From assembly GCA_053919585.1 (NCBI GenBank), contig CM132784.1: DNA of 64,000 bases. The stretch is one strand, 5' to 3'. Origin of the DNA: Euprymna scolopes. Its lineage: Eukaryota. Of the stretch, positions 4,911-59,532 are shown piece by piece. The notes beneath the pieces were generated by a model. It had not been told where the DNA came from and searched no databases. It was given only the letters and a program-made list of their open reading frames with translations. A program made the translations under genes and the position numbers. The stretch's first letter is position 1, and every line of letters begins with the position of its first letter.

Positions 4911-4980
4911 CCTGGTTTCGAATGTAACTAGATTCAGCGAAACTGAAGAGTCATAAATGATGAAACATGTCTGTGGATAA
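4911..4980 (+). ncRNA. Hammerhead ribozyme motif (type I, palindromic stem III) after a B-box-like motif; stem I degraded
   Basis: CTGAAGA (4943-4949), stem II GTCA-taaa-TGAT, GAAAC-AT-GTC (4962-4971), then TGTGG. GGTTTCGAAT lies at ~4914. Confidence 0.6.
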
Positions 4981-6429
4981 TTACATCATCTTTTCTCACA
5001 GACTATTAGGCAGATTTGGGTTAAATTTTGTATTGATATTTGTTATCATAAAGTGCAGCGAATTAAGTATCATGGTATCCGTTTGACGCACGGTTATGGA
5101 TTAATTGGGATTAGTTATCACAATCCCACATTTATTCTCATTTTCTCACGACAACAACTGGGAAGATCTGGCTGAAATTTTGTATAGGCATTTATCATGT
5201 TAAGGTGCAGCGAACTGAGTACTATGGTCCCCGTTAGATCTAGAGAAAGATTAACAGCGAATACTATTTAATGAAAAAATCAGTACAATTTAATCATATT
5301 GAACTATCAATTTGACATAAAATATTAATTCTAAGTCAACGGCCTATAACTTTCCCGTTTTTCATACAAGAGAGAAGAAGAGGTGAGGGAATATATATGC
5401 AAAGATAAAAAGGAGGAAATCATTGAACACAAGAATGAAAGACAGAAATAACCAAGGGAAAGAAAGAATAGTTTGAAATCGAAAGACGAGGAAATTTACA
5501 AACAAACAAAAAAGAAGCAGAAAAAAACCCCGATAAAAATAACAAACAAGGAGGAACAAGGAAAGAATAAAAAAAAATACAACAAACTACAAAAAAGTGT
5601 GCGTGGGTGAAAACATGAGAATAGTGTTGGGCAACTAACACTTTTTCGGCCATTATTTTTGGGCTTTGTTTAATTAGTAGTGAACAGACAAAAAATGAAA
5701 TGAAGATCTAAAAAAATGTTCAATTAAAAAAAAAAAACAATGACAAAAATAAGAGTTGAAAAAGAAAAAGTGCTACCTGTGAAAAAAAGAAAAGAAAAAA
5801 GATAAATAAAAAATGCAAATAATTTCAAATCAATTAAGGAACTGATCGAATTCATCCGGATCGACTTAAATAGCATCTATTTTTACCAGCACATCAACGA
5901 GTTTGCTCGACCTGTTGGTTGCGGAGAAGGGAGGGCGGAAAATATCGGCCGTGTTTGCCCATGGGGCCTTTTTTTTATAATTTTTTTTAAGGGAGATGTC
6001 TTTGATGTTCGAGCATGAAAAATGAATGACCATTCGGCCCCATCCATACCTGTTTTCATCAGCTAAAATGATTTTTGCTTTGCTATGCTTTATTTATTTC
6101 GTATTACCTTCGGTGACACGTTTTTGATTGAGAACCTCTGAAAGCAAACAGTTGTAAAAGCGGAGAGTAAATGCGGCCGATACAAAAAGGTAACAGAATA
6201 AAAAGCCTCGCTCCATACAATGAAAAGACATTTTCAATTATTTTAGACAACGAGTCGAAACCAACCGCATATATCCATTGTTCCCCCACTTTATTTCGAA
6301 AAAAAATCAGTGCATGCCCTTCCGAAAAGAGTACGTACGCCACGAAGTCTTTATAATAACACAACCGTTACACAAGCACCAAGTTTTAAAAAAATATCAA
6401 AGCCCACGAACACTTAACAATTGTGTTGT

Positions 6430-6732
6430 CTCGATATACTCCAGACTAACCTGACAAACAGCAACATTTCACCCCTTCATTGTTGAGGTCCCTAGATGTC
6501 CGAAAGGCTTTTACTCTAATACTTTCTTACCTGAGACTGCTAGACTTTAAAATTCCCTTCCTGGTTCCTGCTTCCCTGACTGTACTAACCTTGCAGAAGT
6601 TTATAATGTGAACAGACATCTCCCTGCTCAACTCCCCACAGGTCTCTGTTAGACACGATCCTAAATAAGAGCCCCTTATGTTCCATGTGGCAATATGTCT
6701 TGTTTAGGATAAAAAGTATTAAACAAAAAACA
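6430..6732 (+). mobile_element. CR1-group LINE 3' fragment (family A-related)
   Basis: Similar to 19855-20150 (gactgctagactt...aattcc; aatgtgaacagacatctc). Ends in an A tail. Confidence 0.8.
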
Positions 6733-6819
6733 TCTAATTCCCCACTGCTCATGTGTTTTGAATTTCGATGGATGCTCTAATAAGGAATGCTTGCACGTTT
6801 TTATAATAAAGCATAGGTT

Positions 6820-8752
6820 ACAGTTAAAGCTGCTTTCAGAACCGCCAGCAACCACTGTAAAAGAGTAATAAAAAATGCAAGAGAACTATATGCGCAATCC
6901 GTTAAGTTCAAAGTAGCTGAGCAGCGACTTGGTTCCCACCAGTTCTGGCAAATAGCAAATAGGATCTTGAACAGAAACGTGCGCTCTATCCCAACTATTA
7001 TCAATGGACCAGAGGTCATCTCGACAGCATCCGACAAGGCCAAATTATTTGCCAAAAACTTTGCGGCAAATTCTACCATGTGTGACGAAGGCCATCAACT
7101 CCCCATATTCCCTCCTATAACAGACAACACGCTATGCAACATACAAATATCTGTGCGTGAGGTGGCCAAGCTAATCAAGAACCTTGACTCCAGTAAAGAA
7201 ACTGGTCCCGACGGTATTCCAATTATAGCGTTAAAAAAATTACAACCAGAACTTGCCCCCATACTTTCCAAACTGTTTAAGCGTTGCCTTAAGGAGAAGT
7301 GCTTTCCAACACCTTGGAAAACCTCATCAGTATGCCCTGTATTTAAGAATTCAGGTGATAAGTCATCTCCCTCTCAGTACAGACCAATAAGTCTCCTGTG
7401 TGTCATGAGTAAGTTGCTGGAATCCACAATAAATAGAGAAGTAGTCAACCACCTCAGCAGAAATAACCTTCTTAGCGACACGCAATATGGTTTCCGCTCT
7501 GCTAGATCTACAGCAGATGTGCTAACGGTTATATCTCATAGGATTAGCGAATCTCTCGAAAAAGGCTTCCTTTCTAGGGCAATTGCTCCCGACATATCAA
7601 AGGCCTTCGATAAGGTTTGGCATAAAGGCCTACTATACAAGATTTCCAGCTACGGTATAACTGGAAATGTTTTCTCTATCATTAAGTCATTTCTCTCAGA
7701 TAGGCTCATAAGAGTAGTTGTTGATGGGCAGAAATCAAAGGCCCACAGTATTAATGCTGGAGTCCCTCAGGGGTTCATACTGGGCCCAACTCTCTTCCTG
7801 ATTTACATCAATGATCTCCCAAAACACATACTTAAATCATTCGTTGACATCTATGCTGATGACACGACCATCTATGGCAACACATCAAAGGCCGTAAATG
7901 ATGATGTTCTCTCTGATTCTCCCTCCGCTGATCTTGAGCGCGTGTTACAGTGGGGGAAGAGGTGGCTCCTATCTTTACATCATCAACGCTGATCCCCATC
8001 TGGCACCAATTGAAATTGATGGCTCTCGTCTAGGGGAAGTCCCACGTTTGGATAAGCTTCTGGGCTTGACCTTTATTCCTAACCTGAAATGGAACACGTA
8101 CATAAAGTTTATTGCCAAGGTCGCGGGGAAAATGGTGGTATCCTTCTACAGCTCCAGAACATATCTCACTGCTGATGCAATTCTCTATCTATATAAAAGC
8201 GAAGTACGTCCAAGGATGGAGTACTGCTGCCACATCTGGGTAGGAGCTGCTAAAAACAGCCTATCCTGCCTTGACAGAGTACAAAATAGGCTTCGTTGCT
8301 TAGTGGGGTATGCCCTTTTCTCTTTCTTGCAATCTCTCTCCCACAGGAGAGACGTCGCGAGCCTGTCTTTGTTTTATCGTTACTTCCATGGCAAGTGCTC
8401 GTCTGAGCCCTAATCCCTGCCCCCTCTCTTCGCCAATCATTCACGAAAAACACCCGTCTAGCTGAAACCTATGTAAAAATTTTCCCTCACTCTTTATCTG
8501 TGCCAAAACCAAAACGTAGATTCCATGAACAAAGCTTCTTTCTTAGAAGTGCATGCCTGTGAAACTGTTCCGCTTGCCTGTTTCCCACCTGACTACAACC
8601 TGGATGTCTTCAAGTCCAACATAAACAAATGCCTGATGAACAGCCCCCTTAAGTAAGACACTTTATCAAATCTCAACACTAGCGTACTGTACACGCAATA
8701 ACCCTCATCCTCGAATGGCTTCGGGGCCTTGATAAGTGGTGACCACCTTGTA
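6820..8752 (+). mobile_element. CR1-group LINE family B, 5'-truncated ~1.9 kb copy
   Basis: RT ORF2 remnant plus a 3' UTR ending gataagtggtgacc. Homologous to 26815-28930 (minus) and 13715-14252. Confidence 0.95.
6967..8413 (+). pseudogene. Frameshifted LINE reverse transcriptase (ORF2 fragment)
   Basis: RT motifs GPDGIP, QYRPISLL, QYGFR, DISKAFDKV, GVPQG and YADD in 6967-7992. Continues in another frame (7898-8413: RPRMEYCCHIW, LSHRRDVASL). Confidence 0.93.
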
Positions 8753-8764
8753 ATATATATATAT

Positions 8765-9040
8765 TATATTGAAAAAAAAATGAAAAAAATCGTTATACAT
8801 TTTGTATATTAAGCGTAGTTTATTTTTAATCAGTTTATATGCGTGTCACATTGTTACAGTTGTAACGCCCCCAGTTTTTAATGGTACAGTTCTGCTTTCG
8901 GTTTCCCTTCTAGCAGATGGCACCCAAAACCTTTTTTACTTTTGGAATCACGACTCTGTAATAATATATACTACATTTGGACAAATTAAAGTATAGTTAA
9001 GCGTATTTTACGACCGAGCAAAGCCGCCCCCGTCTGCTAG
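8765..9040 (+). mobile_element. Non-autonomous Helitron-like element, family H3
   Basis: Ends ccgagcaaagccg...ctgCTAG|t. The body matches 62400-62665. Confidence 0.65.
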
Positions 9041-11682: not shown

Positions 11683-12114
11683 TGTCGTAGAGAAAGTGAC
11701 GATACGTTAATGTCCTTCATTTCCGGCCCGCTTTTTAATTGTTGTCGGTCAGTTTGACAGGGTGCCTTGAGATAGTGTTTGAAAGCCACTTGTGTCTCAC
11801 ACTTTGTCCCTCGCAGACCAGTAATCATCTGAAGCCTCGCGGGTATGGAGACGTTAGGGTGGACAACATTCGTGGGCGAGTCGAAATTGCCTGAGAGGTG
11901 AGAGTCAAGACACATACGCTCTCGATTCTTCTCAGCTAATAAAGAATTTAATAAAACTGCAAAAAGGAACTAACCATAAATATCAACAGTACATTGACAA
12001 TCAATGTTCCCTCAAACCCAACAGCTTATTTAAAGCCACCTCGAAGACATGCGAATAATTTATTATGTCTGACATATGGTTTTATTAATAAACTAGCAAA
12101 ATAAACATAGGAAG

Positions 12115-12495
12115 TAGAACTGCCAACTATCAACTATATAGTTCAACTACATGTTTTGCTTTGATGCTTGGCTAAGCTAGCTGTAGAGCTGTCGTACAGC
12201 GAAACAGATTGGCTGTGGATGACGATATAAACCCCCATCTTAGGTTAAGTATTTTCATTAAATTATATCCTCTGTTGTTTAATTAGCTTAATACAAATCT
12301 CCTTGTTAGTAAATAAATAAATAGAGGATTTTAAAAGTGTCGGTCAATATTTTTAAAAGACATGGATATATAATTTACAAGCGTCGATACGATGGCTTTG
12401 AAAGTAAAACTGCCAGCTATCGATTAGATAGTTGTAAGTTGGGATGGATCATAGTCTAGTCGCACCGACGAGTTGTAATATAGCAAAACACTCTC
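12115..12495 (+). repeat. Two tandem degenerate copies of the family-1 hammerhead element
   Basis: 12181 ctgtaga-gctgt-cgt-acagc-gaaac...tgtggatgac and 12451 atagtctagtcgca-ccgacga-gttgt-aat-atagc-aaaac both align to 13324-13378. Each is preceded by aactgcca(a/g)ctatc. Confidence 0.65.
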
Positions 12496-12682
12496 TGCAA
12501 AAGCGAAACATATCAACTGGAATTTTGAAATTTCAGATTACAGATTGTATAATACTGTAAAGTTAAAGCCCACATTAGTATTAATATTTATAAGAACATT
12601 AAAAAAAAAAGATAAAGAAGCTCAATACATCAGAGAGAGCAATATTATAAACGAAAATTTGGAATTAAAATCAATAAATTAA

Positions 12683-12768
12683 AAAGTTTATGATAAATTT
12701 GGTATTCGACACGGAATACAAAAAAAAAATTTGTATTCCATGTCGAATAATAAATTTGTCGTAATTTT
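12683..12768. repeat. Inverted repeat/hairpin with ~40-bp arms
   Basis: tattcgacacggaatacaaa ... tttgtattccatgtcgaata, with flanking extension. Confidence 0.8.
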
Positions 12769-12836
12769 TAAAATATACTGAATTTAATTAATATATATTT
12801 TTGGCTTGGTGCAAAAATGTTTTTTCACGTTCAAAT

Positions 12837-12896
<60 letters not shown>

Positions 12897-13160
12897 ACCC
12901 CCAGAAANNNNNNNNNNNNNNNNNNNNNNNNNNNNNNNNNNNNNNNNNNNNNNNNNNNNNNNNNNNNNNNNNNNNNNNNNNNNNNNNNNNNNNNNNNNNN
13001 NNNNNNNNNNNNNNNNNNNNNNNNNNNNNNNNNNNNNNNNNNNNNNNNNNNNNNNNNNNNNNNNNNNNNNNNNNNNNNNNNNNNNNNNNNNNNNNNNNNN
13101 NNNNNNNNNNNNNNNNNNNNNNNNNNNNNNNNNNNNNNNNNNNNNNNNNNNNNNNNNNNN

Positions 13161-13382
13161 GCGACGCTCTTTGTGTAAACAAATCGAGCGGAGGTATTTC
13201 GGACGATATCAAAACATCGTTAAACTCACTACTCTTTCAAGCAGCCGCCAATAGCGTAATGGTTAGAAGCCTTGACTGCCGTATAAACGGTCGGGTTTCA
13301 ATCCTGGCTTGAGGTAGTTGCCTGTCTAGCCGCACTGATGAGCTGTGAAACAGCGAAACAGTACTGCATGTGGATGACTATA
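13161..13382 (+). mobile_element. tRNA-derived SINE-like element with 3' hammerhead (family 1)
   Basis: A box TAGCGTAATGG (13252), B box GGTTTCAATCC (13294), HHR at 13324-13378, then a (TA)n tail. A second copy lies at 17400-17698. Confidence 0.85.
13324..13378 (+). ncRNA. Type I hammerhead ribozyme; U16.1 is C in this copy
   Basis: Stem I ccgca/tgtgg, plus gtc/gac beyond an internal loop. CTGATGA at 13335-13341, stem II gctgt-gaa-acagc, GAAA, palindromic stem III cagtactg, then CA instead of TA. Confidence 0.8.
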
Positions 13383-13714
13383 TTTATATATATATATATA
13401 TGTATTCATATGTATCTAGGAACACACACACACATATATATATATACATAGGATAACTCCTATACTACTTACTAGATCATAATACATTTTTGAATAGATA
13501 TGCTAAGCGTAAGGTATCTAAATGTAGGCTGTATTTAGTTTAATTAACAGAAAGCGGATAGAAAACGGGCAAAAGTACTAAAATTGCAGACATCTTCGAT
13601 TTTCATGAATTGTTAATATGTACAAAATCGTTCTATATTTCAGTGTTATTTTAGTATTTTTATATGTGTGTATGGAACACAACGTCTTTATGAAAATCAA
13701 AATATTAAAACTAA

Positions 13715-14252
13715 AACTACTGTCAAAAATTTTCCTCACTCTTTATCTGTGCCAAAACCAAAACGTAGATTCCATGAACAAAGCTTCTTTCTTAGAAGTG
13801 CACGCCTTTTCTCTTCCCTGCAACCTCTCTCCCACAGAAGAGACGTTGCGAGCCTATGTTTTTTTTATCGTTTTTACCATGGCAGGTGCTTGTCTGAGCT
13901 CCAATCTCTCGTCCCCGTTATCTTTCACGATAAACTAGCTGAAACCACTGTCACTCTTTATCTGTGCCTAAATCAAAACGTAGATTCCATGAGCAAAGCT
14001 TCTTTCTTTGAACTGCACGCCCGTGGAACTCTCTACCGCTTGTCTGTTTTCCTCCTGACTTCAACATGAATGTCTTCAAGTCCAACATAAACAAATTCCT
14101 GAAAAACAGCCCCCTCTAAGTAATGACACTTTATCAAATCTCCAATACTAATGAATACTGCAACACTATCCCATTGATTTCTGTACAATAAATAAACCTT
14201 ATCCCCGAGTTGCTTCTGGGCCTTGATAAGTGGTGACCTCCATGTAAAAAAA
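13715..14252 (+). mobile_element. LINE family B 3' fragment with a rearranged duplicated segment
   Basis: Encodes 'LQPLSHRRDVASLCFFYRFYHGRC'. The segment cactctttatctgtgcc...gtagattccatga occurs at ~13737 and ~13953. Family B tail followed by poly(A). Confidence 0.9.
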
Positions 14253-14637
14253 GAGATTAATAAAAGAATAAACCCTTAAGTTTAGACTTTTAAAGCATTT
14301 TATAGGATGTTATGGGTAAAATAGGAAACGAAAATAACCTTGCGTTTGGAAATTTAATATTTTAGATCTGCTTTAAATGTGATTCACATAAAAACAAAAT
14401 AACTGAATTAGTATTTCGTCTTGCCATTTTTAAATGGTAGGAAAATAATGTAAAACATTCTCTTGAAAAAAAATCATCTAATTGATCTTTGATCAAATTG
14501 GAGTAAGAATTTTAGAGATGAGTTTTAAATATCATGATGTTTTAATTCTAATATTTTTAAAGGAGCCTAAAAAGTAGTGTAAACTATTCTGCCCGGTGAC
14601 AAAAATTTTGCCTTTTCTGAATAGATAATGTTATATA

Positions 14638-14702
14638 TGTGGTGGTGGAGGGTAGAAACGTAGATTGTGAACTCAACGTTCAGGTTTCGATCCCCGCTTG
14701 AT
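14638..14702 (+). repeat. Degenerate tRNA-like SINE head
   Basis: A-box-like ggtggtggagggtag followed by B box GGTTTCGATCCC (~14682). Confidence 0.45.
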
Positions 14703-15261
14703 TTAGGGCTTAACTGTTAGGTTCGCAGCAATTTTTTAATAATTCAATTCATTATTTTCGACTAATCAATTATTTAATTAATTCCTCCCTACACACGTGT
14801 TATTATTTCTAGATTTAACAAATAAATTGTTTATAACATCATCTGTTTACAGTTTTCGCGTAAGCTAACATTATGCGATTATAGTACTGAAGCTAAATTT
14901 AAGATTCGCAGTAATTTTATATAATTCTATTTCAAATTGCCAGTATTAGTATCCATTAGTATAACTTCAATATTGTCATTTAATTATATTAACCAACATG
15001 CTAGTTTTTTTTCCAGAAACTTAAGTTTTCCAGTCTCCAAACTGGCTGTGTTTACATTTAATGATTGCAGCCACTGTAAAAAAAACTTTATTTATGAATC
15101 AGTTTTAAACTACCAGCGCCCTCTTCATTAATCAAATATTCAACAATTATTTTGTCAATTGATATGTTTTATTTAAAAAAAAAACTTTTCAAATCTAGGA
15201 GTTTTTATATATGCCAAACGTTACAACGGTTTATTCATATTTACGATGCTTAAACTTCCAG

Positions 15262-15322
<61 letters not shown>

Positions 15323-15330
15323 TATATACA

Positions 15331-16440
15331 CTAGCATTTCAGCCCGGCGTTGCCCGGGTGTTTTTAGGTGTGTGGTGAGCAAAAAAAAAAGTGGTAGTAG
15401 GAAGGCAGGCTCCAACCCGTATTGCGAAGGAGGAAAAAAAACGGGAAAAACGTGGCGTCTTTGCTGTTACGACCACCGCCAAACCGGAAATTACGTAGGT
15501 TTAAATTAAAGCTATACAATCGAGAAGAGGGGTGACTTTCGAAAATATCGGCGAAAAAATCGACCCCTCCCTGTAGAAAAGTGCTCATTTGAGGATAAAG
15601 AAATTAATGTTTTTAGCTAATTTTTCGGTATTTGTCGTCTGAAGGGTCAGTTAAAAAACGATACTGTGAGAATGCGTCGCCTCTATTGAAAGTTTAAGGC
15701 AGACATGAAAACAGACATACATACATACATTTATATATTGGTAACTAAAAATTTTCGACCCAGACCGATTAAAAAGCTTGCCCTATCTCTGAATATCCTT
15801 TATGTAAACTTTCAAATGTTTAGTGTATTTATTTGCTTCCCCACCAAAGCAAATTAGGTACAAGACCGGTTTTAATGTGGGGTAAAAACAAGCTCCCCTA
15901 AAAGTAGGCAAAAAGGGGTCACTCTCGTTACCAAAAATAATAATTGTCCCAGTATAGAGGGTTTCCCCTCCATTGACTGGTACAAATTATCTTAAGTGCA
16001 GCATCTGCAGAACAGACCAAGAACAACAGAAAAAAGGTAAGCCTCTTCAAATGTTTAGACCATAAATTGTCTGAGTAATTTGGTAGAGACAACAGAGGTC
16101 AATTTTTTAAAAACTTTGACCGCTATTATGACCCCGTAACCTTTATTGTTTTGGGCTCAAATCAAGTTATTAAGTTAGATCCATGTCCAAGGAAGCTATG
16201 ACTAAAAGTTCAATTGTTTATACCCAAAATTAGCAGAGGAGTTTGGTAGAGCTCTCAAAGGTCAAATCGTTGAACTTTTACCCCTTAACAGCCAAATTTC
16301 TGGCCGAAAACGGATTACAAAGATTTTCCCAAATATTCATACCTTGTATATCAAATTTCGAGTCTGCAGACTGAAAATTGACAGAGAGATTATGTACATA
16401 GACAGACGCACACACATACAGACAGACACTTTCATATATA
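15331..16440 (-). mobile_element. Non-autonomous Helitron family H1 (long form)
   Basis: The minus-strand 3' end is the hairpin cccgg-gcaacg-ccggg followed ~8 nt later by CTAG|T. Largely the reverse complement of 55538-56403. A (CAGA)/(CA)-type repeat lies near the 5' end. Confidence 0.85.
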
Positions 16441-16452
16441 TATATATATATA

Positions 16453-17175
16453 CTAGCAAAAATACCCGTTGTTGACTGGGTTCAAAAACAGCCTACAGAA
16501 AATGGATTCTGATTTATGAAAGTATGTTAGGTTATGAAAAGGAAGGGTTGTAAAGAGATAGCTTCGAATTTGGGGGTATCAAAACCAAAGCAAAATATGA
16601 TGAAAGTAAAAATAAAATAGATACACCCCATAATTTATTATACCACACCTGTTCACACTAAAACACTTATCACAATATTATGTGGATCTATATTAAAAAA
16701 AAACCTTGTTATACTTTGTGACATATTTCCATTCTATGGAGGTCAGGTGCGAACGAACACTCCATAATTTTATTATATCATATTTCTTCAAACTGGAACA
16801 TAATTATCAAAGTATACTTACGCAGATAGATATAAAAAGTCTTTATTAAAGTGTGTGCCTATTTCCATTCTATGGAGGCCAGGCGCAAACGCAGACACCA
16901 AAATTTTATCATGCCATCCCTATTTAAGTAAAAACATACGTATCAAAGTATTATGTACATCTATATCAAAAACACTTGTAAACGTTTGTTTTTAATTTTT
17001 AAATTTTTCATTTCCATACTTTGTGGACCAGGATCGTACGCAGATCCCACAATTTTAATGAATCATTATTATGCCAGATCAAACATACCCATTCCTGTGT
17101 CTCGATACATCTTCTGTCATTATATATGATCAGTTTTCTATAATAGTAAACCATATAGAAGCCTATTCGTGACCA

Positions 17176-17234
<59 letters not shown>

Positions 17235-17254
17235 GTTCAGCTTTATATTATAGA
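16453..17254 (-). mobile_element. Non-autonomous Helitron family H2
   Basis: On the minus strand it starts A|TCtataatataaagc, contains (TG)n, and ends in a hairpin plus CTAG at 16453. The body is highly similar to 53150-53772. Confidence 0.8.
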
Positions 17255-17399
17255 TATACAGAGAGAGAATGTGTGAGAGAGAGATATTGTGTTGGTAAAA
17301 TATGTTTTTCAATTATATTTAACTCTTTGTGTATACTAATCTTTTTGTGTTTAGAAGTTCACTGTATGTTAAATATAATAACAATATATATATGTATGT

Positions 17400-17698
17400 G
17401 TGAGTGTGGTTAGGTGTCTTGACTGTCGTACAGGCGGCCGGGTTTCAATCCTGTAATGCTCCTCATTTTGAGTTGAGCATATTGAGAAGTGATACACGAA
17501 TTACTATTGGCTTATAAAGCGATGCTCTTTGTGTAAACAAATCGAGCTTAGGTATTTCGGACGATGTCAAAACATCGTTAATACACGACTCCCACAGCAG
17601 CTGACGATTAGCGTAATGGTTAGGAACCTTGACTGTCATACAGGCGGTCCAGTTTCAATCCTGGCCTGAGGTAGTTGCCTGTCTAGCCGCACTGACGA
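17400..17698 (+). mobile_element. Family-1 SINE-like element with two tRNA-like heads; hammerhead truncated after CTGACGA
   Basis: B boxes at 17441 and 17651, A box at 17609. gtctagccgcaCTGACGA (17681-17698) is followed directly by Helitron H1 sequence. Confidence 0.8.
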
Positions 17699-17893
17699 AA
17701 ATTTGGCTGCTAAGAGGTCAAAGTCAAAAGAGTTGACCTTTGCAGACTCTATCAAACTCCTCCGCCAATTCTGGGTCCAAACACTTAGATGTAGGATACC
17801 TGGACATGAGTGAAACTTTTTAATATATATATACATGTGCACATAAAGTTATGAACAGTACATAGGGTCTGAGCAAAGCCGGCGTAACTGCTA

Positions 17894-17894
<1 letters not shown>
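17699..17894 (+). mobile_element. Helitron-like fragment (H1-related body)
   Basis: Matches ~54609-54720. Ends ctgagcaaagccggcgtaactgCTAG|t before (TA)n. Confidence 0.65.
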
Positions 17895-17950
<56 letters not shown>

Positions 17951-18197
17951 ATTGTTGATTTATTGATTTTTTTATTAGCGATTCTGTGGTATTTCTTACC
18001 GCTCCCTGAGCGCTTTTTGAGAGAAGTTACCTATCCCTTTTTTATATTCTAGTCATCCTCATTTGGGGCATATTATTTGTTATTATTAATTTTTTCTATT
18101 TATCAAACATTTGAATATTTTTTATACAAATATCTCTTACACATAAAAAATATTTAATAGGTATTCGAATAAAAAATATTCAAATGTTTAGTAAATA

Positions 18198-18237
<40 letters not shown>

Positions 18238-19029
18238 CATACATACATAGGTCTACTACAGTTGTTCACGGTCTACCTACTGGAATTTTAATAGGGTCGA
18301 CCCGTTTGGCAACCGTTTATAATCAGTTCTAAAAACCTTCTCAGCTGCCACCTTTTCCGTACCCCATTTCACACTCTGCTCATTCCTTGCCCCCCCCCTC
18401 CTCATCCCATCCCTGCTTTGTTTTCCTCCGGAAACTTTTCTACCAAATTGTTGCATTCAATAAGTTGGTCTGCGTGTTTATGTTTCAGTCTGGCGTACGT
18501 TGAAAAATCTCTCATTCAAAGTTGATGGAATCTTCAAGAGGATTTGCAATTTATTAACTTGGAAGTTCGTTTGGGACTCTGCCAGCAATCGCCGGTCAGC
18601 CGTCCGGCCTGTCGGGAGGGGTTGTGAACGGCGGACGTAAAATAAAAACGAAAAATGAAAACCAGAAACGCTGGTCAACTGATTCAATGCACTGACCCGT
18701 CTTAAAACATAAAACCTGTTTAGGTTTTAACATCTACTCATGACCCTATTCTATTTTGTTTTAGTTCCCTGAGCCGACAAAATAACAATCTGGTTCGCTT
18801 TGCGTTATGACTTGACATTTTTATTTAGTATATAAATCGATAGACGGTTTTGTTAAACAATCAAGAAATATGAAAATTATTTTTAATAGAACATTTTAAA
18901 AAAATATAAATTTTTTTTAATTTCCTCAAATTTAGGATTTCTTCACAATTTCGTGATGATGAATATATGAGAAACGTTGCTGATAAAGAGGGAAGAATTG
19001 CTGTTTTCTCGGTCAGATTCTCAGCATAG

Positions 19030-20150
19030 ATCTTACGGTATCACTGGTAGAATACTTAACATAATTAAATCCTTTTTAGATAAGAGAAAAACCCAGGTTG
19101 TCCTCGACGGTCGTACATCTAAATAATATGATATAAATGCGGGAGTGCCCCAGGGATCTATCCTTGGTCCTCTGCTGTTCCTGATATTCATAAATGACCT
19201 CCCCGACAAAATTGCCTCTGAGATGGGTATATATGCTGATGACACCACACTCTATAGCAGGCATGACAGGAAAACAAATGAACATATATCTAAAGTAATG
19301 GCAGAAACACTAGAGGATGACCTCCAATCAGTAGTGGAATGGGGACTAAAATGGATGGTAACGTTCAATGCCACCAAGACAAAACTGGTTTCATTCAATA
19401 ATTACAAGAAACCTTGTCTACCACCTATAGCAATGGCCAACAACTCTTTATCTGAGAGTACGTCTTTCAAGCTCCTTGGCCTAACGTTCACAGGAAACAT
19501 GAGTTGGAACAATTACATCGAGGGCATTGCCAGGGCCGCTGCGAGGAAGGTGGGCTCTCTCTACCGTGCTAGAAAACTTCTAACACCCGAAAGTATCCTG
19601 TACCTCTATAAGGCCACTATTCGCCCATGTATGGAGTATTGCTGTCATATTTGGGCCGATGCATCGGCTACTAGTCTCTCGCTCCTTGACAGGGTTCAAA
19701 AGAGAGTCGCAAATCTGATAGGCCCTAAACTGGCATCTAAACTTCAGCCTCTGTCCCATTGTCGAAACGTTGCATCCCTCTTCCTGTTCTACAAGTATTA
19801 TAATGGTGAATGCTCTGAAGAACTGCAAGCACTTGTGCCCCCACGACGTGAACACCCTCGACAGACCCGACAAGCTACAAAATCCCACCCCCACACTGTA
19901 GAGATCCCTAGTTGTAAAAGATCTTTCTACTCCAGTAGTTTCTTCCCCAGAACTGCTAGACTTTGGAATTCCATTCCAGGTCACTGCTTCCCCAACTGTA
20001 CTGACATGCATAAGTTCAAGTGCAACGTGAACCAACATCTCGCTGCCCTAATCCCTACATAGTACCCCAGTAGATGTTTCCCCTGATAGTAGCCCCCTAC
20101 ATTAAAGTGGCAATGTGCCTTGTTTGGGGTGAAAATGTAAAAAACAAAAT
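19030..20150 (+). mobile_element. CR1-group LINE family A, 5'-truncated ~1.1 kb copy with a long open RT C-terminal frame
   Basis: ORF 19145-20062 contains PQGSILGPLLF, YADD, FNATKT and RPCMEYCCHIW. The 3' UTR ends gtgaaaatgtaaaaaac. Confidence 0.95.
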
Positions 20151-20785: not shown

Positions 20786-20999
20786 GACAGTGAGAGACTA
20801 GTAGCAGATGCTCCAGTCCAAATGTGACGACGATACTCCGTACATGGGCGAATGGTTGCCTTGTTTTAGGGTTAGTATGAATCTGGAATAATGACAACTG
20901 AACGGGCGTCTCTACTCCCTTAAGCTCATAAATCAGGACCTTATTACTTGGTGCAGTTTAAGTTTATGCACAAACAGGATTAGAGTAGATATATTTCCG

Positions 21000-21300
21000 C
21001 CACATATCGACATAAAGCGTTGAGTTGTCTAGTGGTTGAAAGTTCAATCCTCACTATAGTCGAAACTGACTAAGAACAAAATAAAAGTATTTACTTAACA
21101 CTTCATAACAGTTATGGATGATAGAACGAGAAGAATCAACCGTGTAGATTAAAGAAAGTGTTCAGGCAAAAAAAAAAAAAAAAAATCCATATAAATTCTC
21201 GAATTCGAAAAGCTGCACCCGAACAAGGTTGCAGGTTACATCGGTCGAAACGTTGTGATAATTATATCTACGATAAAAATCGTAGTAAAAAAAGGCAAAG
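21000..21300 (+). mobile_element. Family-2 tRNA-head/minimal-hammerhead element, degenerate
   Basis: B-box-like agttcaatcc at ~21043. cac-ccgaacaa-ggttg...tcggtc-GAAACGTT-gtg at 21216-21257. Confidence 0.65.
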
Positions 21301-22175: not shown

Positions 22176-22764
22176 TCATATATCTGCTACAATCAAGCGA
22201 GAATTTTCCTATCAACAAGACATCAGTTGGAGCCCTCGATAAGTGTTAGTTTGATTTTATAACAAGTACACACACACACACACAATGCTTACAAGACACC
22301 AATCTTCAAATATCTAAATATTTCTTTTACAAGTAAACCATGACCAAATACGAAAAATTACATAATCTTCGGAGCCCGAATAAAATCCCTTGGTATGGCT
22401 AACCCACCCTGGCTTATACGTGGAATGGTGAACCTGCAAGTGATGTTGCCTCAAGTAACTGCATGAAACTAGATACTCCACCAGGCTAAATTAATTCATG
22501 TCCTGGAATTCAGCTACACCAGGAAACCATTAAAATAAAATAAATAAGTTGTCAATAAAGGAGAAGAAATCTANNNNNNNNNNNNNNNNNNNNNNNNNNN
22601 NNNNNNNNNNNNNNNNNNNNNNNNNNNNNNNNNNNNNNNNNNNNNNNNNNNNNNNNNNNNNNNNNNNNNNNNNNNNNNNNNNNNNNNNNNNNNNNNNNNN
22701 NNNNNNNNNNNNNNNNNNNNNNNNNNNNNNNNNNNNNNNNNNATTTTTGAGATGAGCATTATAT

Positions 22765-23141
22765 ATTAATTTATTTTTTATTTCTGACTATTATTCTCAT
22801 CTTTATCTTATCATCTTCGGGGCCCCTGGCGCAGTTGATAGAGACGTTGAATCTCTACAGTTCCAGATGAACATTGTCTGAAGATAGCGGTTTCAATCCC
22901 ACCCAAAGCGTGCCAGAGGTTAATTGGCCAAAAAATGTGGTGAAACGACAACAACTACAGATGGCAGTGATGGCTGAGAATGCAGTTAGAAGATTTGAAG
23001 TTCCTATCCGTCGCGGTTACCACCTGACGAAGGCCAGAGGAATAGTTGGCCGAAACGTTGTGAATAAACAAAACCAATAAAAGATCAGAAACAACAACTA
23101 ATAAAGATGAGAATAATAGTCCGAAATAAAAATAAATTAAT
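22765..23141 (+). mobile_element. tRNA-head element with Penelope-type minimal hammerhead, bounded by ~41-bp inverted repeats
   Basis: A box TGGCGCAGTTG (22827), B box GGTTTCAATCC (22889), HHR at 23021-23062. 22765-22806 is nearly the reverse complement of 23101-23141. Confidence 0.8.
23021..23062 (+). ncRNA. Minimal type I hammerhead (Penelope-like, dimer type)
   Basis: cac-CTGACGA-a-ggcca-(10 nt)-tggcc-GAAAC-GTT-gtg. The core is intact and stem III is reduced to the AACGTT palindrome. Confidence 0.85.
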
Positions 23142-23539
23142 TCAATAACTAAACATTTGCAAAATAAAAGAGAAATTTAAAAGAATATTAGAACATTTAT
23201 GTACCTCATGTAGCAATCAATGATAGGAACTTCGAGTAATGAGTGTATTTGTAAAGAAATATTCCATGTCCTTCAATGAACAACCTTAAATTGCACAACT
23301 TCTTACTACTTTTTTGGGCCGAGGTGAATATAACAGCGATATCGTTCATTCGAAACTCTTAAACCGTTTATTTATCGAATTTAATGGCGACAGTAATTTG
23401 TCAATTCCGTTAAAGCCATTAGAAACGTCGGGTAGCAAAAGTATCAAGTATTTATTGATCAGTCAATAAAGTGTCATCTACGCACTAACGTCGTTGCGTT
23501 CGACTAGGCACGTTGAATTTCAATCAAAGAGAACAAGAA

Positions 23540-35458: not shown

Positions 35459-35598
35459 NNNNNNNNNNNNNNNNNNNNNNNNNNNNNNNNNNNNNNNNNN
35501 NNNNNNNNNNNNNNNNNNNNNNNNNNNNNNNNNNNNNNNNNNNNNNNNNNNNNNNNNNNNNNNNNNNNNNNNNNNNNNNNNNNNNNNNNTTATTAAAT

Positions 35599-35716
35599 AC
35601 CTACAGACACTAATGTTTCATATTTTCGGTAATCTTCAGTGCAGATTCGAACCCGGCGATAGAAGCCATCTCTGGCTTCATTTAGCAAGGACCACATCCA
35701 TTCAGCTACCGTTACA
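35599..35716 (-). ncRNA. Compact tRNA(Ser/Leu)-like head fused to a type I hammerhead (family 3)
   Basis: Minus strand: A box TAGCTGAATGG, hairpin gaagcca-gaga-tggcttc, B box GGTTCGAATC, then atctgca-CTGAAGA-(13 nt)-GAA-acattagtgt-C-tgtaggt. Confidence 0.75.
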
Positions 35717-35722
35717 CACACA

Positions 35723-41899: not shown

Positions 41900-42040
41900 T
41901 CAGCTGCACTATTTGGATTCTTCATACTCTTCTTGAATGTTATTTTCACAACGTTTCAGCCGATGTAACCTTCGACCTGATACAGGTGTATCTTTTTAGA
42001 CTCTGAAATCTTTCTGTCGAACGAGAATTTGCACAGAATT
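41900..42040 (-). mobile_element. Family-2 hammerhead tail, inverted copy
   Basis: Minus strand cac-ctgtatca-ggtcga-aggttaca-tcggct-GAAACGTT-gtg (41947-41988). Confidence 0.7.
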
Positions 42041-42214
42041 TGTTACTACGTTATATACATGCTATTTATAATTAAATGACATTTAAATTAATATAATGAG
42101 TATTTAGTAATAATCGGTAGTAAGAAATAATGATATATAGTGATAAATGTCTAGATTTTGCAAAAAAAAAAATAGGTTGAAGGCTCCCAAAATTCATATT
42201 AAAATTGTTCGCAA

Positions 42215-42540
42215 AAACCCATGGCGTAGAGGATAAAGTATTTTGTGTCGGCAGTTCTTCGTTAGACTCTTATGAAGGTTGATGTTTCAATCCTCAAAAT
42301 ACAATTTCGAATTACTTAGGACTTCTTATCAGTCATGATTGACGGAAGGAGAGCGCGCTATTTCCGTTAATTAAATGAACGGGTTCCGTCCGATATTCCA
42401 TGTAGATTCCCGAGTTCAGTAAGATACATCTGGAAAAGGTCGGAGATTACATCGACCGAAACATTATGAACATAACACTCAGGTATTCAAAAAATAAAAA
42501 ATAATAATGAATCATCATCCAAAAAATTCAGAAACCTACT
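42215..42540 (+). mobile_element. Family-2 tRNA-head/minimal-hammerhead element
   Basis: A box TGGCGTAGAGG (42222) and B-box-like GTTTCAATCC (42284). HHR-like cat-ctggaaaa-ggtcg...cgacc-GAAACATT-atg at 42427-42468. Confidence 0.7.
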
Positions 42541-50634: not shown

Positions 50635-50965
50635 AGACCTGTGGCGTAACAGATAAAGCATTAAGTAAGTTCAGTTTTAAGTGACACTCTTATGGAGCTT
50701 GAGGATTCAATCCTAACTGAGGGCTACAGTAAGAATTAAATTGCAAATTAATTAAGATGTCTACCCGACCACAGGACACGATAAAGCTACGCCCATGAAT
50801 AAATAAATGGTTCCGTTTGTAATTTCGTGTAAATTCACTAGTTCGAAAGAAAGATTACAGAGTTCGTTAATATGCAACTGAAGAAGATCGGAGATTACAT
50901 CGATGGAAACGTGCGAATAACACCCAAAAAACAAACATTGTCCGAATAATCCGAATAAAATAGAT
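50635..50965 (+). mobile_element. Family-2 tRNA-head/minimal-hammerhead element
   Basis: A-box-like GTGGCGTAACAG (50641) and B-box-like GGATTCAATCC (50703). CTGAAGA-a-gatcg...cgatg-GAAACGT at 50878-50912. Confidence 0.7.
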
Positions 50966-54014: not shown

Positions 54015-54880
54015 TCTATCTATATATCTATAAAAGTGAACGTGCCTGTGTATCTGTCTGTGTGTGTGTGTACATTTCCCTACGCAATAACTCTCACAAT
54101 TTTTAGTCTACAGACTCCAAATTTTATATACATGGTACGGAGATTTGGGAAAATCTATGAGATCGGTTGTTGACCAGAAATTTGGGTGTTAAGGGGTCAA
54201 AGTTCAACGATTTGACCTTTGAGAACTCTACCAAATTCCTCCGACAATTTGGGGTCTAAACACTTGAGATTTTAGATATAGATTCCTTGGACATGGATCT
54301 AACTTAATAACTTGAATTGAGCCCAAAATGATAAATGTTAAGGGATCATAATAGGGGTCAAATTAAAAAAAATTGACCTTTTTTATTGTTTTTTGCTCAG
54401 CATACACCTCCAAACACCCGGGCAACGCCAGGCACACATACTAGTATATCTACAAAAGTGAACGTGTCTGTGTATCTGTGCGTCTGTCTGTGTGTGCGTA
54501 CATTTCCTTACGCAATAACTCTCTCAATTCTTAGTCTACAGGCTCGAAATTTGATATACAGGGTACTGAGATTTGAAAACAAAATCTATGAGATCGGTTT
54601 TCGATCAGAAATTTGGCTGTTAAGGTGTCAAAGTGCAACGATTTGACCTTTGAGAACGCTATCAAATTCCTCCGACAATTTTGGATTGAAACACTTGAAA
54701 TTTTAAATATAGGACATGGATCTAACTTAATAACTTGATTTGAGCACAAAATGATAAATGTTAAGGGGTTATAATAGGAGTCAAATTTTAAAAAATTGAC
54801 CATTTTTTTTTATTTTGTTAATTTTTTTTTGATCAGCATACACCTCCAAACACCCGGGCAACGCCTGGCACTCATGCTAA
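54015..54880 (+). mobile_element. Two head-to-tail non-autonomous Helitrons (H1 short form): 54015-54444 and 54449-54880
   Basis: Each starts TC...aaaagtgaacgtg and ends cccgggcaacgcc(a/t)gg followed by CTAG or CTAA. Confidence 0.88.
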
Positions 54881-58807: not shown

Positions 58808-59218
58808 ATGGGACGATTAAACAGAATCGGAATCGAAAGAATCGGAACCTTTGTGGGTATCGGAATATGTATCGGAAAAAAACTGTGCCTATTTTCCGAT
58901 GCCATAAACGATTCCTTTTTTTATTTGATTTTCTTTAAAGCAAAATCTTTCAGTATTATTAGTAATGATAAAATAAGAAATCTTTATTGATTTTAAACTA
59001 CCAGTAAAACTAAAATATATAAATTATTCTTATGCTTCCGTTTAAGAAAATCTACGAAAATCTAACGTATGCTTGTACGCTAATCGGGAAAAAGAACACA
59101 TCTATAGTTATATATAAAGAGATTTATGAATAATCTGAATCGGAGTCGGTAATTGTATCGGAATCAGAAATTCAGCACGGAATTGGTAGTTGTATCCGAA
59201 AAATATATTCGCGTTGTT

Positions 59219-59221
<3 letters not shown>
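58808..59221. mobile_element. Probable MITE with (ggaatc)-type subterminal repeats
   Basis: Termini atgggacga ... ttgttccat, with aatcgga repeated at both ends. Confidence 0.5.
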
Positions 59222-59305
<84 letters not shown>

Positions 59306-59309
59306 TGGT

Positions 59310-59393
59310 GGATGGTTTTTGGCCTGATGAGGTGATTTTCCCTGATAGGGGGTCATTGAAACACGTTTGCTAATGTGTAGCCAATAGCTCTCC
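59310..59393 (+). ncRNA. Full-length type I hammerhead ribozyme
   Basis: Stem I ttggc (59319-23) pairs with gccaa (59380-84), extended by ggtt/agct and gga/tcc. CTGATGA at 59324-59330. Stem II spans 59331-59357, then GAA, then the 7-bp stem III acacgtt-tgct-aatgtgt. The GUA site predicts cleavage after 59379. Confidence 0.88.
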
Positions 59394-59491
59394 AACAATC
59401 AATATATTGCTCTGTTTCATGCATTGAGCACTCTTTGGAATGACATATTGTGTTGTTGTTATGAGTTACTGAAAAATTCTACCAACAGTAT

Positions 59492-59532
<41 letters not shown>

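What the first reader, a model, noticed from the sequence alone, without database searches (positions are those of the whole stretch)
4911..59495. Pol III SINE-head plus hammerhead-tail elements: several retrozyme-like families in one 64-kb window
Seen: about 12 hammerhead cores or remnants, at 4943, 12181, 12465, 13335, 17692 (half), 21219, 23024, 35633 (-), 41978 (-), 42430, 50878 and 59324. At least seven lie downstream of tRNA-type A/B boxes in ORF-less units of about 120-350 nt. The heads and bodies differ between families, but the design is the same. Known: Schistosoma SMalpha is a tRNA-derived SINE with a hammerhead. Penelope-like elements (PLEs) carry minimal type I HHRs with a palindromic stem III that cleave as dimers. 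Inference: tRNA-derived promoters have fused repeatedly with PLE-type ribozyme tails here, giving non-autonomous elements that may rely on PLE RT/GIY-YIG machinery instead of a LINE. No PLE ORF is present in this window.
Basis: partly seen in the sequence, partly recalled or inferred. Interest (0 to 1): 0.88.

Follow-up and report, generated by a model that had tools for sequence, protein, structure and literature searches.

The report
Hammerhead-ribozyme short retroelements in a mollusc
This mollusc window holds about a dozen mostly dead copies of short non-coding jumping elements that pair a tRNA-gene-style promoter motif with a small self-cutting RNA (hammerhead) motif, a design known from blood flukes and linked to Penelope-type retrotransposons, here in several families, at least two of them hugely repeated.

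Summary
All 12 listed cores or remnants are at the stated coordinates, and the signal is well above chance. A strict hammerhead descriptor finds 4 hits against 0.125 expected, and A-box plus B-box pairs number 5 against 0.43. Only two ribozymes are intact (23024 and 59324). Two are near-intact (13335, 4943) and the rest are decayed. Rfam and ARAGORN call nothing.

There are two architectures:
- Family B (21219, 23024, 41978-, 42430, 50878) matches the published Penelope-type minimal hammerhead.
- Families A, C and D (12181, 12465, 13335, 17692, 4943, 35633-) carry a canonical-like type I hammerhead directly behind a tRNA-like head, as in Schistosoma SMalpha.

Stem II stays paired, with compensatory changes, in both groups. 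Public contigs show that the 23024 and family A units are enormously repeated. Family A occurs head to tail. The 23024 copy carries a locus-specific inverted copy of its own 3' tail, a Penelope-style insertion scar.

Dependence on Penelope elements remains circumstantial. No Penelope ORF lies in the window, no cleavage-site read ends are seen, and RNA reads come from both strands. The conserved repeat also extends upstream of the heads, so these are not classic 5'-headed SINEs.

The scan has noted the same theme more than 60 times elsewhere in this genome. Verdict: a real new variant of a known kind, of moderate interest.

The parts
4914..4980 (+). Family C unit. B-box-like GGTTTCGAATG at 4914-4924, core CUGAAGA at 4943-4949, stem II at 4950-4961, GAAA at 4962-4965, palindromic helix III ACAUGU at 4965-4970, C17 at 4971. 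Stem I is only 1 bp.
   Evidence: Stem II shows compensatory changes relative to family A.
12096..12230 (+). Family A decayed copy. Core CUGUAGA at 12181-12187 (A6 replaced), perfect stem II, GAAA, G at position 17, decayed head.
12385..12520 (+). Family A decayed copy, 284 nt downstream of the previous one and in the same orientation. Core CCGACGA at 12465-12471, with AAAA in place of GAAA.
13161..13378 (+). Best family A unit. Upstream 'body' at 13161-13251 (starts at the gap edge), A box at 13252-13262, B box at 13294-13304, stem I 5' strand at 13330-13334, core at 13335-13341, stem II at 13342-13354, GAAA at 13355-13358, palindromic helix III region at 13358-13367 with C at 16.1 (13367), A17 at 13368, stem I 3' strand at 13369-13373. 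It then runs into (TA)n.
   Evidence: There is no T4 run from head through ribozyme. 85.6% identical to 17519-17695.
17400..17698 (+). Family A head-to-tail 1.5-mer. 5'-truncated head (B box at 17441-17451) lacking linker and ribozyme, body at 17458-17608 (TTTT at 17466), second head (A box at 17609, B box at 17651), then core CUGACGA at 17692-17698, cut off by another repeat from 17699.
   Evidence: An RNA-library contig joins the ribozyme's 3' end directly to 17457 onward (table 7).
20975..21290 (+). Family B old copy. B box at 21041-21050, core CCGAACA at 21219-21225 (two substitutions), stem II 5 of 6 pairs, GAAACGUU then GUGA.
   Evidence: Low summed contig depth (about 7 thousand).
22743..22806 (-). 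Inverted copy of the 3' tail of the 23024 element (matches 23101-23164). Its left end is cut by the assembly gap.
   Evidence: Most other copies of the family have a different sequence upstream of 22815 (table 7), so this arm is locus-specific.
22815..23164 (+). Intact family B element. tRNA-like head (A box at 22827-22837, B box at 22889-22899), second hairpin resembling stem II at 22912-22929, stem I 5' strand at 23021-23023, core CUGACGA at 23024-23030, unpaired A at 23031, 6-bp stem II at 23032-23051, GAAA at 23052-23055, ACGU palindrome at 23055-23058, U17 at 23059, stem I 3' strand at 23060-23062, A-rich tail to about 23164.
   Evidence: Summed DNA-contig word depth is about 1-1.8 million against 12-27 in unique flanks.
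35590..35716 (-). Family D unit. A box at 35708-35698 (11 of 11), B box at 35653-35643 (10 of 11), then 3 nt later core CUGAAGA at 35639-35633. Stem I is 7 bp with a compensatory change, helix III is AC/GU plus a 6-nt loop, triplet GUC. Stem II is broken. The 3' end runs into the gap at 35589.
41900..42045 (-). 5'-truncated family B copy, inverted relative to the 42430 element. The core is mutated to UGUAUCA (41984-41978). Stem II and GAAACGUU are kept.
   Evidence: It shares a duplication with 50878 that 42430 lacks, so it is probably an independent insertion.
42217..42530 (+). Family B copy. A box at 42222, B box at 42284-42293, core CUGGAAA at 42430-42436 (two substitutions), stem II 6 bp, stem I pair changed C-G to U-A.
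50637..50930 (+). Family B copy. A box at 50642, B box at 50704-50713, core CUGAAGA at 50878-50884 intact. The 10.1-11.1 pair is lost and a 3-nt deletion after ACGU leaves G at position 17.
59304..59488 (+). Headless 185-nt insert inside a (TA)n microsatellite, with a complete monomer-type type I hammerhead. Stem I is 59319-59323 with 59380-59384, core CUGAUGA at 59324-59330, stem II at 59331-59357, GAAA at 59358-59361, 7-bp helix III at 59361-59378, A17 at 59379.
   Evidence: the MFE fold is the three-way junction. T5 and T4 runs inside it. No other copy in the window.

Best explanation
These are copies, mostly dead, of several families of short non-autonomous retroelements. Each unit combines an internal RNA polymerase III-type promoter motif (tRNA-like A and B boxes) with a type I hammerhead ribozyme.

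Inferred working model:
- Units are transcribed, by Pol III from the internal boxes and/or by read-through from neighbouring units.
- The hammerhead, acting in cis or as a dimer through its palindromic helix III, cuts multimeric or read-through RNA at unit boundaries. A unit RNA therefore runs from one cleavage site through tail/body and head to the next ribozyme.
- That RNA is then copied into the genome by the RT and GIY-YIG endonuclease of Penelope-like elements encoded elsewhere. This leaves partial tandems and inverted 3'-end copies.

Shown here: the motifs, their enrichment and linkage, stem conservation, very high repetitiveness, head-to-tail arrangement in family A, and an inverted-tail scar on one family B copy.

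Inferred: Pol III use, cleavage in vivo, and the Penelope partner.

The headless 59324 unit is best read as a separate hammerhead-bearing fragment, either a solo retrozyme-like monomer or a 5'-truncated Penelope 3' end, inserted into (TA)n.
For: Enrichment and linkage:
- Hammerhead descriptor hits are 4 against 0.125 expected, and 2 against 0.007 with stem I.
- A+B box pairs are 5 against 0.43, three of them directly upstream of cores.

Ribozyme type:
- Family B shows every emergent feature listed for Penelope minimal hammerheads in PMC4209133: an unpaired nucleotide between A9 and 10.1, G10.1-C11.1, a 6-bp helix II, a 3-bp helix I and palindromic 15.2-16.2.

Stem conservation:
- Family B stem II is paired in 93% of cells, with compensatory changes at 3 of 6 pairs. 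Slid controls give 20-42%.
- Families A/C/D stem II is paired in 88% of cells, with 3 of 5 pairs compensatory.

Abundance and arrangement:
- Summed DNA-contig depth over 22719-23112 and 17400-17793 is 10^4 to 10^5 times that of unique flanks.
- In family A the body precedes the head at both loci, two heads lie 210 nt apart, and a contig joins the ribozyme's 3' end to the body.
- That contig has U at 16.1, giving a 10-nt palindromic helix III, where the window copy has C.

Insertion scar:
- The 23024 element is preceded by an inverted copy of its own 3' tail, which other family members lack. This fits priming from the RNA 3' end at both target strands, as described for Penelope-like elements (PMC8557442). 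It does not fit LINE twin priming or a MITE terminal inverted repeat.

Other:
- There are no T4 runs from head through ribozyme in the two best copies.
- The SINE tails do not resemble the 3' ends of the two LINE families in the window.
Against: - No Penelope RT or GIY-YIG ORF is in the window, and no partner could be fetched.
- Poly(A) RNA reads cover the 23024 unit about equally on both strands, and no read-start pile-up occurs at the predicted cleavage site.
- Heads are not called as tRNA by ARAGORN or Rfam, even with relaxed settings.
- In most copies of both abundant families, conserved sequence continues upstream of the head. An internal Pol III promoter alone cannot explain that.
- Family A has TTTT about 27 nt after the cleavage site.
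- No target-site duplications were found.
- The nearest-neighbour fold of the 23024 ribozyme prefers an inactive pairing, and the dimer cofold does not form the ACGU helix.
- Rfam hammerhead models score below threshold.
Confidence: 0.55

Rival explanations
1. The units are not independent SINEs. They are solo pseudo-LTRs or 5'-truncated 3' ends of Penelope-like elements whose own terminal region carries both the tRNA-like boxes and the hammerhead.
For: - PMC4209133 states that most minimal hammerheads occur as single motifs, probably from truncated Penelope-like elements.
- Contig depth rises towards the 3' (ribozyme) half of the 23024 unit, from 0.95 to 1.8 million, as expected for 5'-truncated copies.
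- Most family copies share a conserved leader upstream of the head.
- 41978(-) is a 5'-truncated copy.
- Unchecked scan notes report GIY-YIG remnants followed directly by a tRNA-type promoter and a hammerhead elsewhere in this genome.
Against: - Three family B copies in the window (23024, 42430, 50878) all begin within a few bases of the start of the tRNA-like head, and there is no similarity between their upstream flanks.
- No RT or GIY-YIG remnant adjoins any of the 12 sites.
- The A-rich leader could be the tail of a preceding unit.
Confidence: 0.2
2. They are ordinary LINE-mobilised tRNA-type SINEs. The hammerhead is a body or processing module, or a relic, unrelated to the integration machinery.
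For: - LINE fragments of two families are abundant in the window.
- Tails are A-rich, and read consensus after the ribozyme is A-rich.
- Bivalve SINEs are reported to rely on several LINE partners (PMC11481361).
- Both LINEs and these units abut (TA)n, so microsatellite association is not specific.
Against: - The SINE tails show no similarity to the 3' ends of either LINE family here beyond one 8-mer.
- The inverted arm at 23024 duplicates the element's own 3' terminus, which LINE twin priming does not do.
- The ribozyme type of family B is the one found in Penelope pseudo-LTRs.
Confidence: 0.15
3. The hammerhead resemblance is chance, or a by-product of some conserved SINE core domain with no ribozyme fold.
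For: - No Rfam hammerhead model reaches its threshold.
- Most cores are mutated.
- One descriptor hit, at 1626(-), looks like chance.
Against: - No shuffle out of 1500 reaches the observed counts.
- Compensatory stem changes occur in both groups.
- The extra features that match the published Penelope motif were not part of the search pattern.
- The 59324 unit folds into the three-way junction as its minimum free energy structure.
Confidence: 0.03

Closest known systems
SMalpha / Sjalpha SINE-like retroposons of Schistosoma (Ferbeyre et al. 1998; Laha et al. 2000, as summarised in PMC6765202 and PMC8490949)
   Same: - Short ORF-less repeat of about 300 nt with a Pol III-type promoter followed by a type I hammerhead with a very short or palindromic helix III.
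- Occurs head to tail.
- The promoter lies internal to the ribozyme-delimited unit. Family A matches this logic.
   Different: - The host is a mollusc, not a flatworm, and there is no sequence similarity.
- Several families coexist.
- Family B uses the Penelope minimal hammerhead, not the canonical one.
- Cleavage and Pol III transcription are untested here.
Minimal hammerheads of Penelope-like element pseudo-LTRs (Cervera and de la Pena 2014, PMC4209133)
   Same: Family B has the unpaired base after A9, G10.1-C11.1, a long helix II, a short helix I and palindromic 15.2-16.2. These imply dimeric action. Sequence varies widely between copies.
   Different: It is not next to any RT/GIY-YIG ORF here. 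It is preceded by tRNA-like A/B boxes 130-176 nt upstream, in a unit of about 300 nt.
Metazoan non-LTR retrozymes (Cervera and de la Pena 2020, PMC7229834; bioRxiv 10.64898/2026.07.22.740005)
   Same: 170-400 nt AT-rich ORF-less units with type I hammerheads. Known in a mussel. Proposed to be non-autonomous partners of Penelope-like elements. Family A shows a head-to-tail arrangement.
   Different: - Most copies here are dispersed singles, not arrays.
- There is no circular RNA evidence.
- Retrozymes are not described with tRNA-like promoter boxes in the papers read.
- The 59324 unit is not unusually self-paired (z = -1.1).
tRNA-derived SINEs of bivalves and gastropods (PMC4758252, PMC11481361)
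   Same: tRNA-type A and B boxes, a short non-coding body, an A-rich tail, and high copy number in molluscs.
   Different: - Those papers report LINE-derived tails and conserved central domains. They contain no mention of hammerheads or Penelope partners.
- Here the conserved repeat extends upstream of the head, and the heads no longer score as tRNA.

Membership tests
Hammerhead ribozyme, type I | Conserved core CUGANGA ... GAAA with the boxes flanking a helix II | tested here: met
   Exact in 4943, 13335, 23024, 35633(-), 50878 and 59324. The other six sites have 1-4 substitutions or a truncation.
Hammerhead ribozyme, type I | A15.1-U16.1 pair followed by H17 and a helix I closing the junction | tested here: met
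   Met in 23024 (U17, 3-bp helix I) and 59324 (A17, 5-bp helix I). 35633(-) has GUC and a 7-bp helix I. 13335 fails at 16.1, and 4943 lacks helix I.
Hammerhead ribozyme, type I | Score at or above the Rfam gathering threshold for a hammerhead model | tested here: not met
   No hit at gathering score. The best is Hammerhead_3 at 22.4 bits against 48.5. The minimal motifs were originally found with a relaxed structure descriptor, not a covariance model (PMC4209133); whether Rfam's models cover motifs without a helix III was not checked.
Hammerhead ribozyme, type I | Self-cleavage at the predicted site | not testable with these tools
   Poly(A) reads show no pile-up of ends at 23059/23060. This library is not suited to detect it.
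Penelope-type minimal hammerhead | Unpaired nucleotide between A9 and 10.1, G10.1-C11.1, long helix II, short helix I, palindromic 15.2-16.2 | tested here: met
   Family B meets this fully in 23024 and partly in the other four copies. The criteria come from PMC4209133. Families A, C and D do not have the unpaired nucleotide.
Penelope-type minimal hammerhead | Location in the pseudo-LTR of an element encoding RT and GIY-YIG endonuclease | tested here: not met
   No such ORF is in the window. The link to Penelope elements elsewhere in the genome rests only on unchecked scan notes.
tRNA-derived SINE | A and B boxes with tRNA-gene spacing | tested here: met
   13252/13294, 22827/22889 and 35708/35653, with spacing of 31-51 nt. 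Five pairs against 0.43 expected.
tRNA-derived SINE | Head recognisably derived from a tRNA (cloverleaf or homology) | tested here: not met
   ARAGORN finds none at default settings or at ps90/ps80. There is no Rfam tRNA hit even with local E-value searches. The shared B box has T where tRNA genes have the conserved C56.
tRNA-derived SINE | Element begins at the head; the 3' tail is shared with a partner LINE; target-site duplications are present | tested here: inconclusive
   Three family B copies start at the head, but family read consensus and family A extend upstream. Tails are unlike the LINE ends in the window. No duplications were found, and gaps hide three boundaries.
SMalpha-like / non-LTR retrozyme | Head-to-tail repeats of a 170-400 nt unit, each with a type I hammerhead | tested here: inconclusive
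   Family A forms a 1.5-mer at 17400-17698, and a contig joins the ribozyme end to the body. 12181 and 12465 are 284 nt apart, but their spacers are not demonstrably homologous. Family B copies are dispersed.
SMalpha-like / non-LTR retrozyme | Circular or cleaved monomer RNA in vivo | not testable with these tools
   Only one raw-read poly(A) run was available.

The most novel reading that the evidence does not exclude
In this mollusc, promoter-plus-hammerhead units of two ribozyme architectures have become some of the most repeated sequences of the genome by parasitising Penelope-like RT/GIY-YIG machinery. They would then be a SINE-like class with a non-LINE partner, in which ribozyme cleavage sites define the ends of the mobile RNA instead of a transcription start and a terminator or poly(A) tail.
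Probability: 0.35. Interest if true: 0.75.

Novelty: new variant of a known kind. Interest (0 to 1): 0.55.

Why it matters
Three things are already known. Animal hammerheads are tied to Penelope-like elements. Retrozymes are proposed to be their non-autonomous partners. SMalpha shows that a Pol III promoter can be joined to a hammerhead in flatworms.

What this window adds is a mollusc in which several families share that design. One of them uses the Penelope minimal ribozyme and carries a Penelope-style insertion scar. Two families (A and the 23024 subfamily of B) reach huge repeat depth.

The mollusc SINE papers I read attribute SINE tails to LINE partners and do not mention ribozymes. If the Penelope dependence holds, part of the 'SINE' load of mollusc genomes belongs to a different mobilisation system. 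The system would also offer natural material for asking what the ribozyme does in retrotransposition: defining RNA ends, dimerisation, or RT recognition.

Tried and rejected
- **Rfam.** Searched at gathering score and at E-value thresholds, on the whole window and on four sub-regions. No usable hammerhead or tRNA hit.
- **Type III reading of 13335.** Rfam aligns it as type III, with an upstream CUGUC pairing to ACAG. I rejected this as the main reading because helix I would be 1 bp. The type I reading gives a 5-bp helix I, shared with 35633(-) through a compensatory change.
- **ARAGORN at relaxed thresholds.** Heads are not called, and ps70 is pure noise.
- **Collection scans.** Exact patterns from family B and family A ribozymes returned nothing from the metagenome collection, and the family B pattern returned nothing from the viral collection, so no outside copies or partner loci could be fetched.
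- **Penelope ORF search.** Only LINE-type RTs were found.
- **Target-site duplications and flanking direct repeats.** Nothing convincing.
- **12181/12465 as a tandem array of the 17458-17610 body.** Spacers are not significantly similar.
- **MITE reading of the 48-nt inverted arms at 23024.** Rejected, because other family copies have a different upstream sequence.
- **41978(-)/42430 as a single twin insertion.** Unlikely, because the two belong to different subfamilies.
- **Thermodynamic dimer fold of 23024.** It does not recover the active fold.
- **Scan look-up of the 59324 unit by sequence.** Blank.

Full report
**Context.** The window is AT-rich (about 34% G+C) and packed with repeats. 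Public runs that hold its repeats are labelled mollusc or invertebrate. Two LINE families are present. One has an L1/R2-like RT at 6817-7989, with a second copy at 28788-26913. The other is CR1/jockey-like, at 19127-20140, with copies ending at 4081 and 44839. Among 132 stop-to-stop ORFs of 70 aa or more, only three carry an RT domain; the two ORFs examined (6967-7992 and 19145-20062) are LINE-type and the third (27838-28314) lies in the second copy of the first family. None has a GIY-YIG domain.

**Check of the observation.** All twelve listed places carry CUGANGA-type boxes or recognisable remnants, followed by a hairpin and GAAA.

I wrote a descriptor requiring:
- an exact core;
- an optional unpaired base after A9;
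- a helix II of at least 4 bp directly flanked by the boxes;
- GAAA;
- an A15.1...U16.1 segment that is either a hairpin or a palindrome, followed by H17.

It finds four hits: 4943, 23024, 59324, and one probable chance hit at 1626 on the minus strand. The mean in 1500 composition-preserving shuffles is 0.125, and no shuffle reached four. With a helix I of at least 3 bp it finds two hits (23024, 59324) against 0.007.

A-box plus B-box pairs at tRNA-gene spacing number five against 0.43 expected. Three lie directly upstream of cores 13335, 23024 and 35633. The unusual B-box variant TTTCAATCC occurs eight times against 1.3 expected.

The curated tools see nothing. Rfam has no hit at gathering score, and its best hammerhead alignment scores 22.4 bits. 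Neither ARAGORN nor the Rfam tRNA model calls the heads, even with relaxed settings. The heads are therefore 'tRNA-type promoter motifs', not demonstrable tRNA derivatives.

**Two ribozyme architectures.**

*Family B* (21219, 23024, 41978 minus strand, 42430, 50878) reads as follows: helix I strand, CUGANGA, one unpaired A, a 6-bp helix II starting G-C, GAAA, the palindrome ACGU, then U17 and GUG. This matches feature by feature what Cervera and de la Pena listed as emergent properties of Penelope minimal hammerheads: an extra nucleotide between 9 and 10.1, conserved G10.1-C11.1, a long helix II, a short helix I, and palindromic 15.2-16.2 implying dimers (PMC4209133).
- Only 23024 is intact.
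- 50878 has an intact first box, but a 3-nt deletion places G at position 17.
- The other three copies have 2-4 core substitutions.
- Across the five diverged copies helix II is paired in 93% of cells, with compensatory double changes at three of six pairs. Slid controls give 20-42%.
- Four of the five copies have a head with GGCG-type A box and TTCAATCC B box 130-176 nt upstream.
- 41978 is a 5'-truncated copy.

*Families A, C and D* have no unpaired base. They have a 5-bp helix II with a 3-nt loop, a short palindromic helix III and the conserved 3' strand UGUGGAU. This is the canonical-like metazoan type I form seen in SMalpha and retrozymes. The ribozyme follows the head within 3-30 nt. In 35633 the B box is 3 nt from the core, and the intervening bases form helix I.
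- 13335 has an intact core, helix II and a 5-bp helix I, but C at 16.1.
- A contig from an RNA library shows another copy with U at 16.1. That gives a 10-nt palindromic helix III followed by A17 and UGUGG (table 7).
- Helix II is paired in 88% of cells, with three of five pairs compensatory. 4943 differs from family A at three pairs while keeping all of them paired. Helix I of 35633 carries a G-C to A-U exchange.

*The 59324 unit* is different in kind. It is a complete, monomer-type hammerhead with a 5-bp helix I, a long helix II and a 7-bp helix III, and it forms the three-way junction as its minimum free energy fold. It sits in a 185-nt headless insert with internal T runs, inside a (TA)n microsatellite. 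No second copy exists in the window.

**Abundance and arrangement.** I laid public contigs and reads on 17400-23300.
- The 23024 unit has a summed DNA-contig word depth of about 1-1.8 million, and the family A head region about 0.3-0.4 million. Unique flanks have 12-27. These are not copy numbers, but they show very high repetition.
- 21219 is far lower, so it is old or from a rare subfamily.

Family A is arranged head to tail:
- The same 90-150 nt 'body' precedes the head at both 13161-13251 and 17519-17608.
- Two heads lie 210 nt apart at 17400-17698. The first unit lacks the linker and ribozyme.
- One contig joins the ribozyme's 3' end directly to the start of the body.

For the 23024 family, 61-78 contigs share a leader upstream of position 22815, where the tRNA-like head starts. 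The window copy lacks this leader. It has instead an inverted copy (22743-22806) of its own 3' tail (23101-23164).
- Because the arm is locus-specific, it is not a transposon terminal inverted repeat.
- Because it duplicates the element's 3' terminus, it differs from LINE twin priming.
- It fits the inverted 5'-truncated copies described for Penelope-like insertions (PMC8557442).
- A few DNA contigs also show strand-switch joints inside this family (table 5).

**What was not found.**
- Poly(A) RNA reads cover the 23024 unit at about 130-fold on both strands, and no excess of read ends lies at the predicted cleavage site. There is thus no evidence for sense-specific Pol III transcripts or for cleavage in vivo. 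The library type is poorly suited to either.
- No target-site duplications were found, and three element boundaries are hidden by assembly gaps.
- Nearest-neighbour folding of the 23024 ribozyme prefers an inactive pairing. This is in line with the low in vitro activity reported for minimal hammerheads.
- Pattern scans of the metagenome and viral collections returned nothing, so no partner element could be examined.

**Interpretation.** The data best fit short non-autonomous retroelements whose unit is delimited by hammerhead cleavage sites and contains an internal Pol III-type promoter. This is the logic described for SMalpha, where the promoter ends up internal to cleaved monomers and tandem copies are needed for propagation (PMC6765202). 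This would explain two things: conserved sequence lies upstream of the heads, and the two best copies have no T4 run between head and ribozyme.

Mobilisation by Penelope machinery is suggested by the family B ribozyme type and the inverted-tail scar. It remains an inference.

The strongest rival is that the units are simply truncated Penelope 3' ends.
- For: depth rises towards the 3' half, and unchecked scan notes place a tRNA-type promoter and hammerhead directly after GIY-YIG remnants elsewhere in this genome.
- Against: three family B copies in this window all start at the head, with unrelated upstream flanks.

A LINE partner is a weaker rival. The tails do not match the LINE ends here.

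'Repeated fusion' is not established. Heads A and B share the same aberrant B box, and only head D has a canonical one. 'PLE-type tails' applies to family B only.

**Literature.**
- Penelope minimal hammerheads, metazoan retrozymes (including in a mussel) and their proposed dependence on Penelope-like elements are published (PMC4209133, PMC7229834, bioRxiv 10.64898/2026.07.22.740005).
- SMalpha-type promoter-plus-hammerhead SINEs are known from schistosomes (PMC6765202, PMC8490949).
- The mollusc SINE papers I could read do not mention ribozymes or Penelope partners (PMC4758252, PMC11481361, PMC10294476).
- I found no description of tRNA-box-headed Penelope-type hammerhead units in molluscs. 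The search covers open-access text only.

**Earlier scan notes.** The scan has flagged the same theme more than 60 times on other pieces of this genome, and two follow-ups reached similar readings. This window adds several things:
- co-occurrence of several families;
- the covariation counts;
- the head-to-tail evidence for family A;
- the read-depth evidence;
- the observation that the repeat extends upstream of the heads.

Noticed in passing
window 1027-1135 (-): 5S rRNA-like match of 31.7 bits, below the gathering score of 38 (E = 0.013). It could be a 5S pseudogene or a 5S-derived SINE head.
   Followed up: no
window 40091-40174 and 61865-61944: Two about 84-nt near-perfect hairpin repeats that score against the mir-548 model (66.9 and 37.8 bits, below the gathering score of 90), on both strands. 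They are 78% alike. They look like MITE-type palindromic elements, not microRNA genes.
   Followed up: no
window 3977-4084, 32238-32583, 38804-38973, 59496-59878: Large palindromes (108 nt at 93%, 346 nt at 87%, 170 nt at 84%, 383 nt at 74% self-complementary). Several are centred on or next to (TA)n tracts.
   Followed up: no
window 12908-13160, 22574-22742, 35459-35589: Three of the five assembly gaps directly abut hammerhead-bearing units. This suggests the assembler broke at these high-copy or inverted repeats.
   Followed up: partly
window 22912-22929: Just after the B box of the 23024 element there is a second hairpin closely resembling the ribozyme's helix II, followed by an A-run and GAAAC but without a CUGANGA box. 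It may be a degenerate second ribozyme module. Most family copies have a variant hairpin there (loose ends at 22909).
   Followed up: partly
whole window: Ten of the twelve hammerhead sites lie on the + strand (two-sided binomial about 0.04). Five family A-type copies cluster within 12100-17700. Possible orientation or regional bias, for example an intron context.
   Followed up: no
window 15321-16429 with 56413-55583, and 54020-54879: An inverted pair of about 1.1-kb repeats (83-87%) far apart in the window. A tandem duplication of roughly 420 nt period at 54020-54879 belongs to the same repeat family. Another member interrupts the 17692 unit at 17699-17786.
   Followed up: no
window 19939-19972: 92 poly(A) RNA reads show a 'goes back 34' joint with 19 inserted letters inside the CR1-like LINE. 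This is a rearranged, expressed copy elsewhere in the genome.
   Followed up: no
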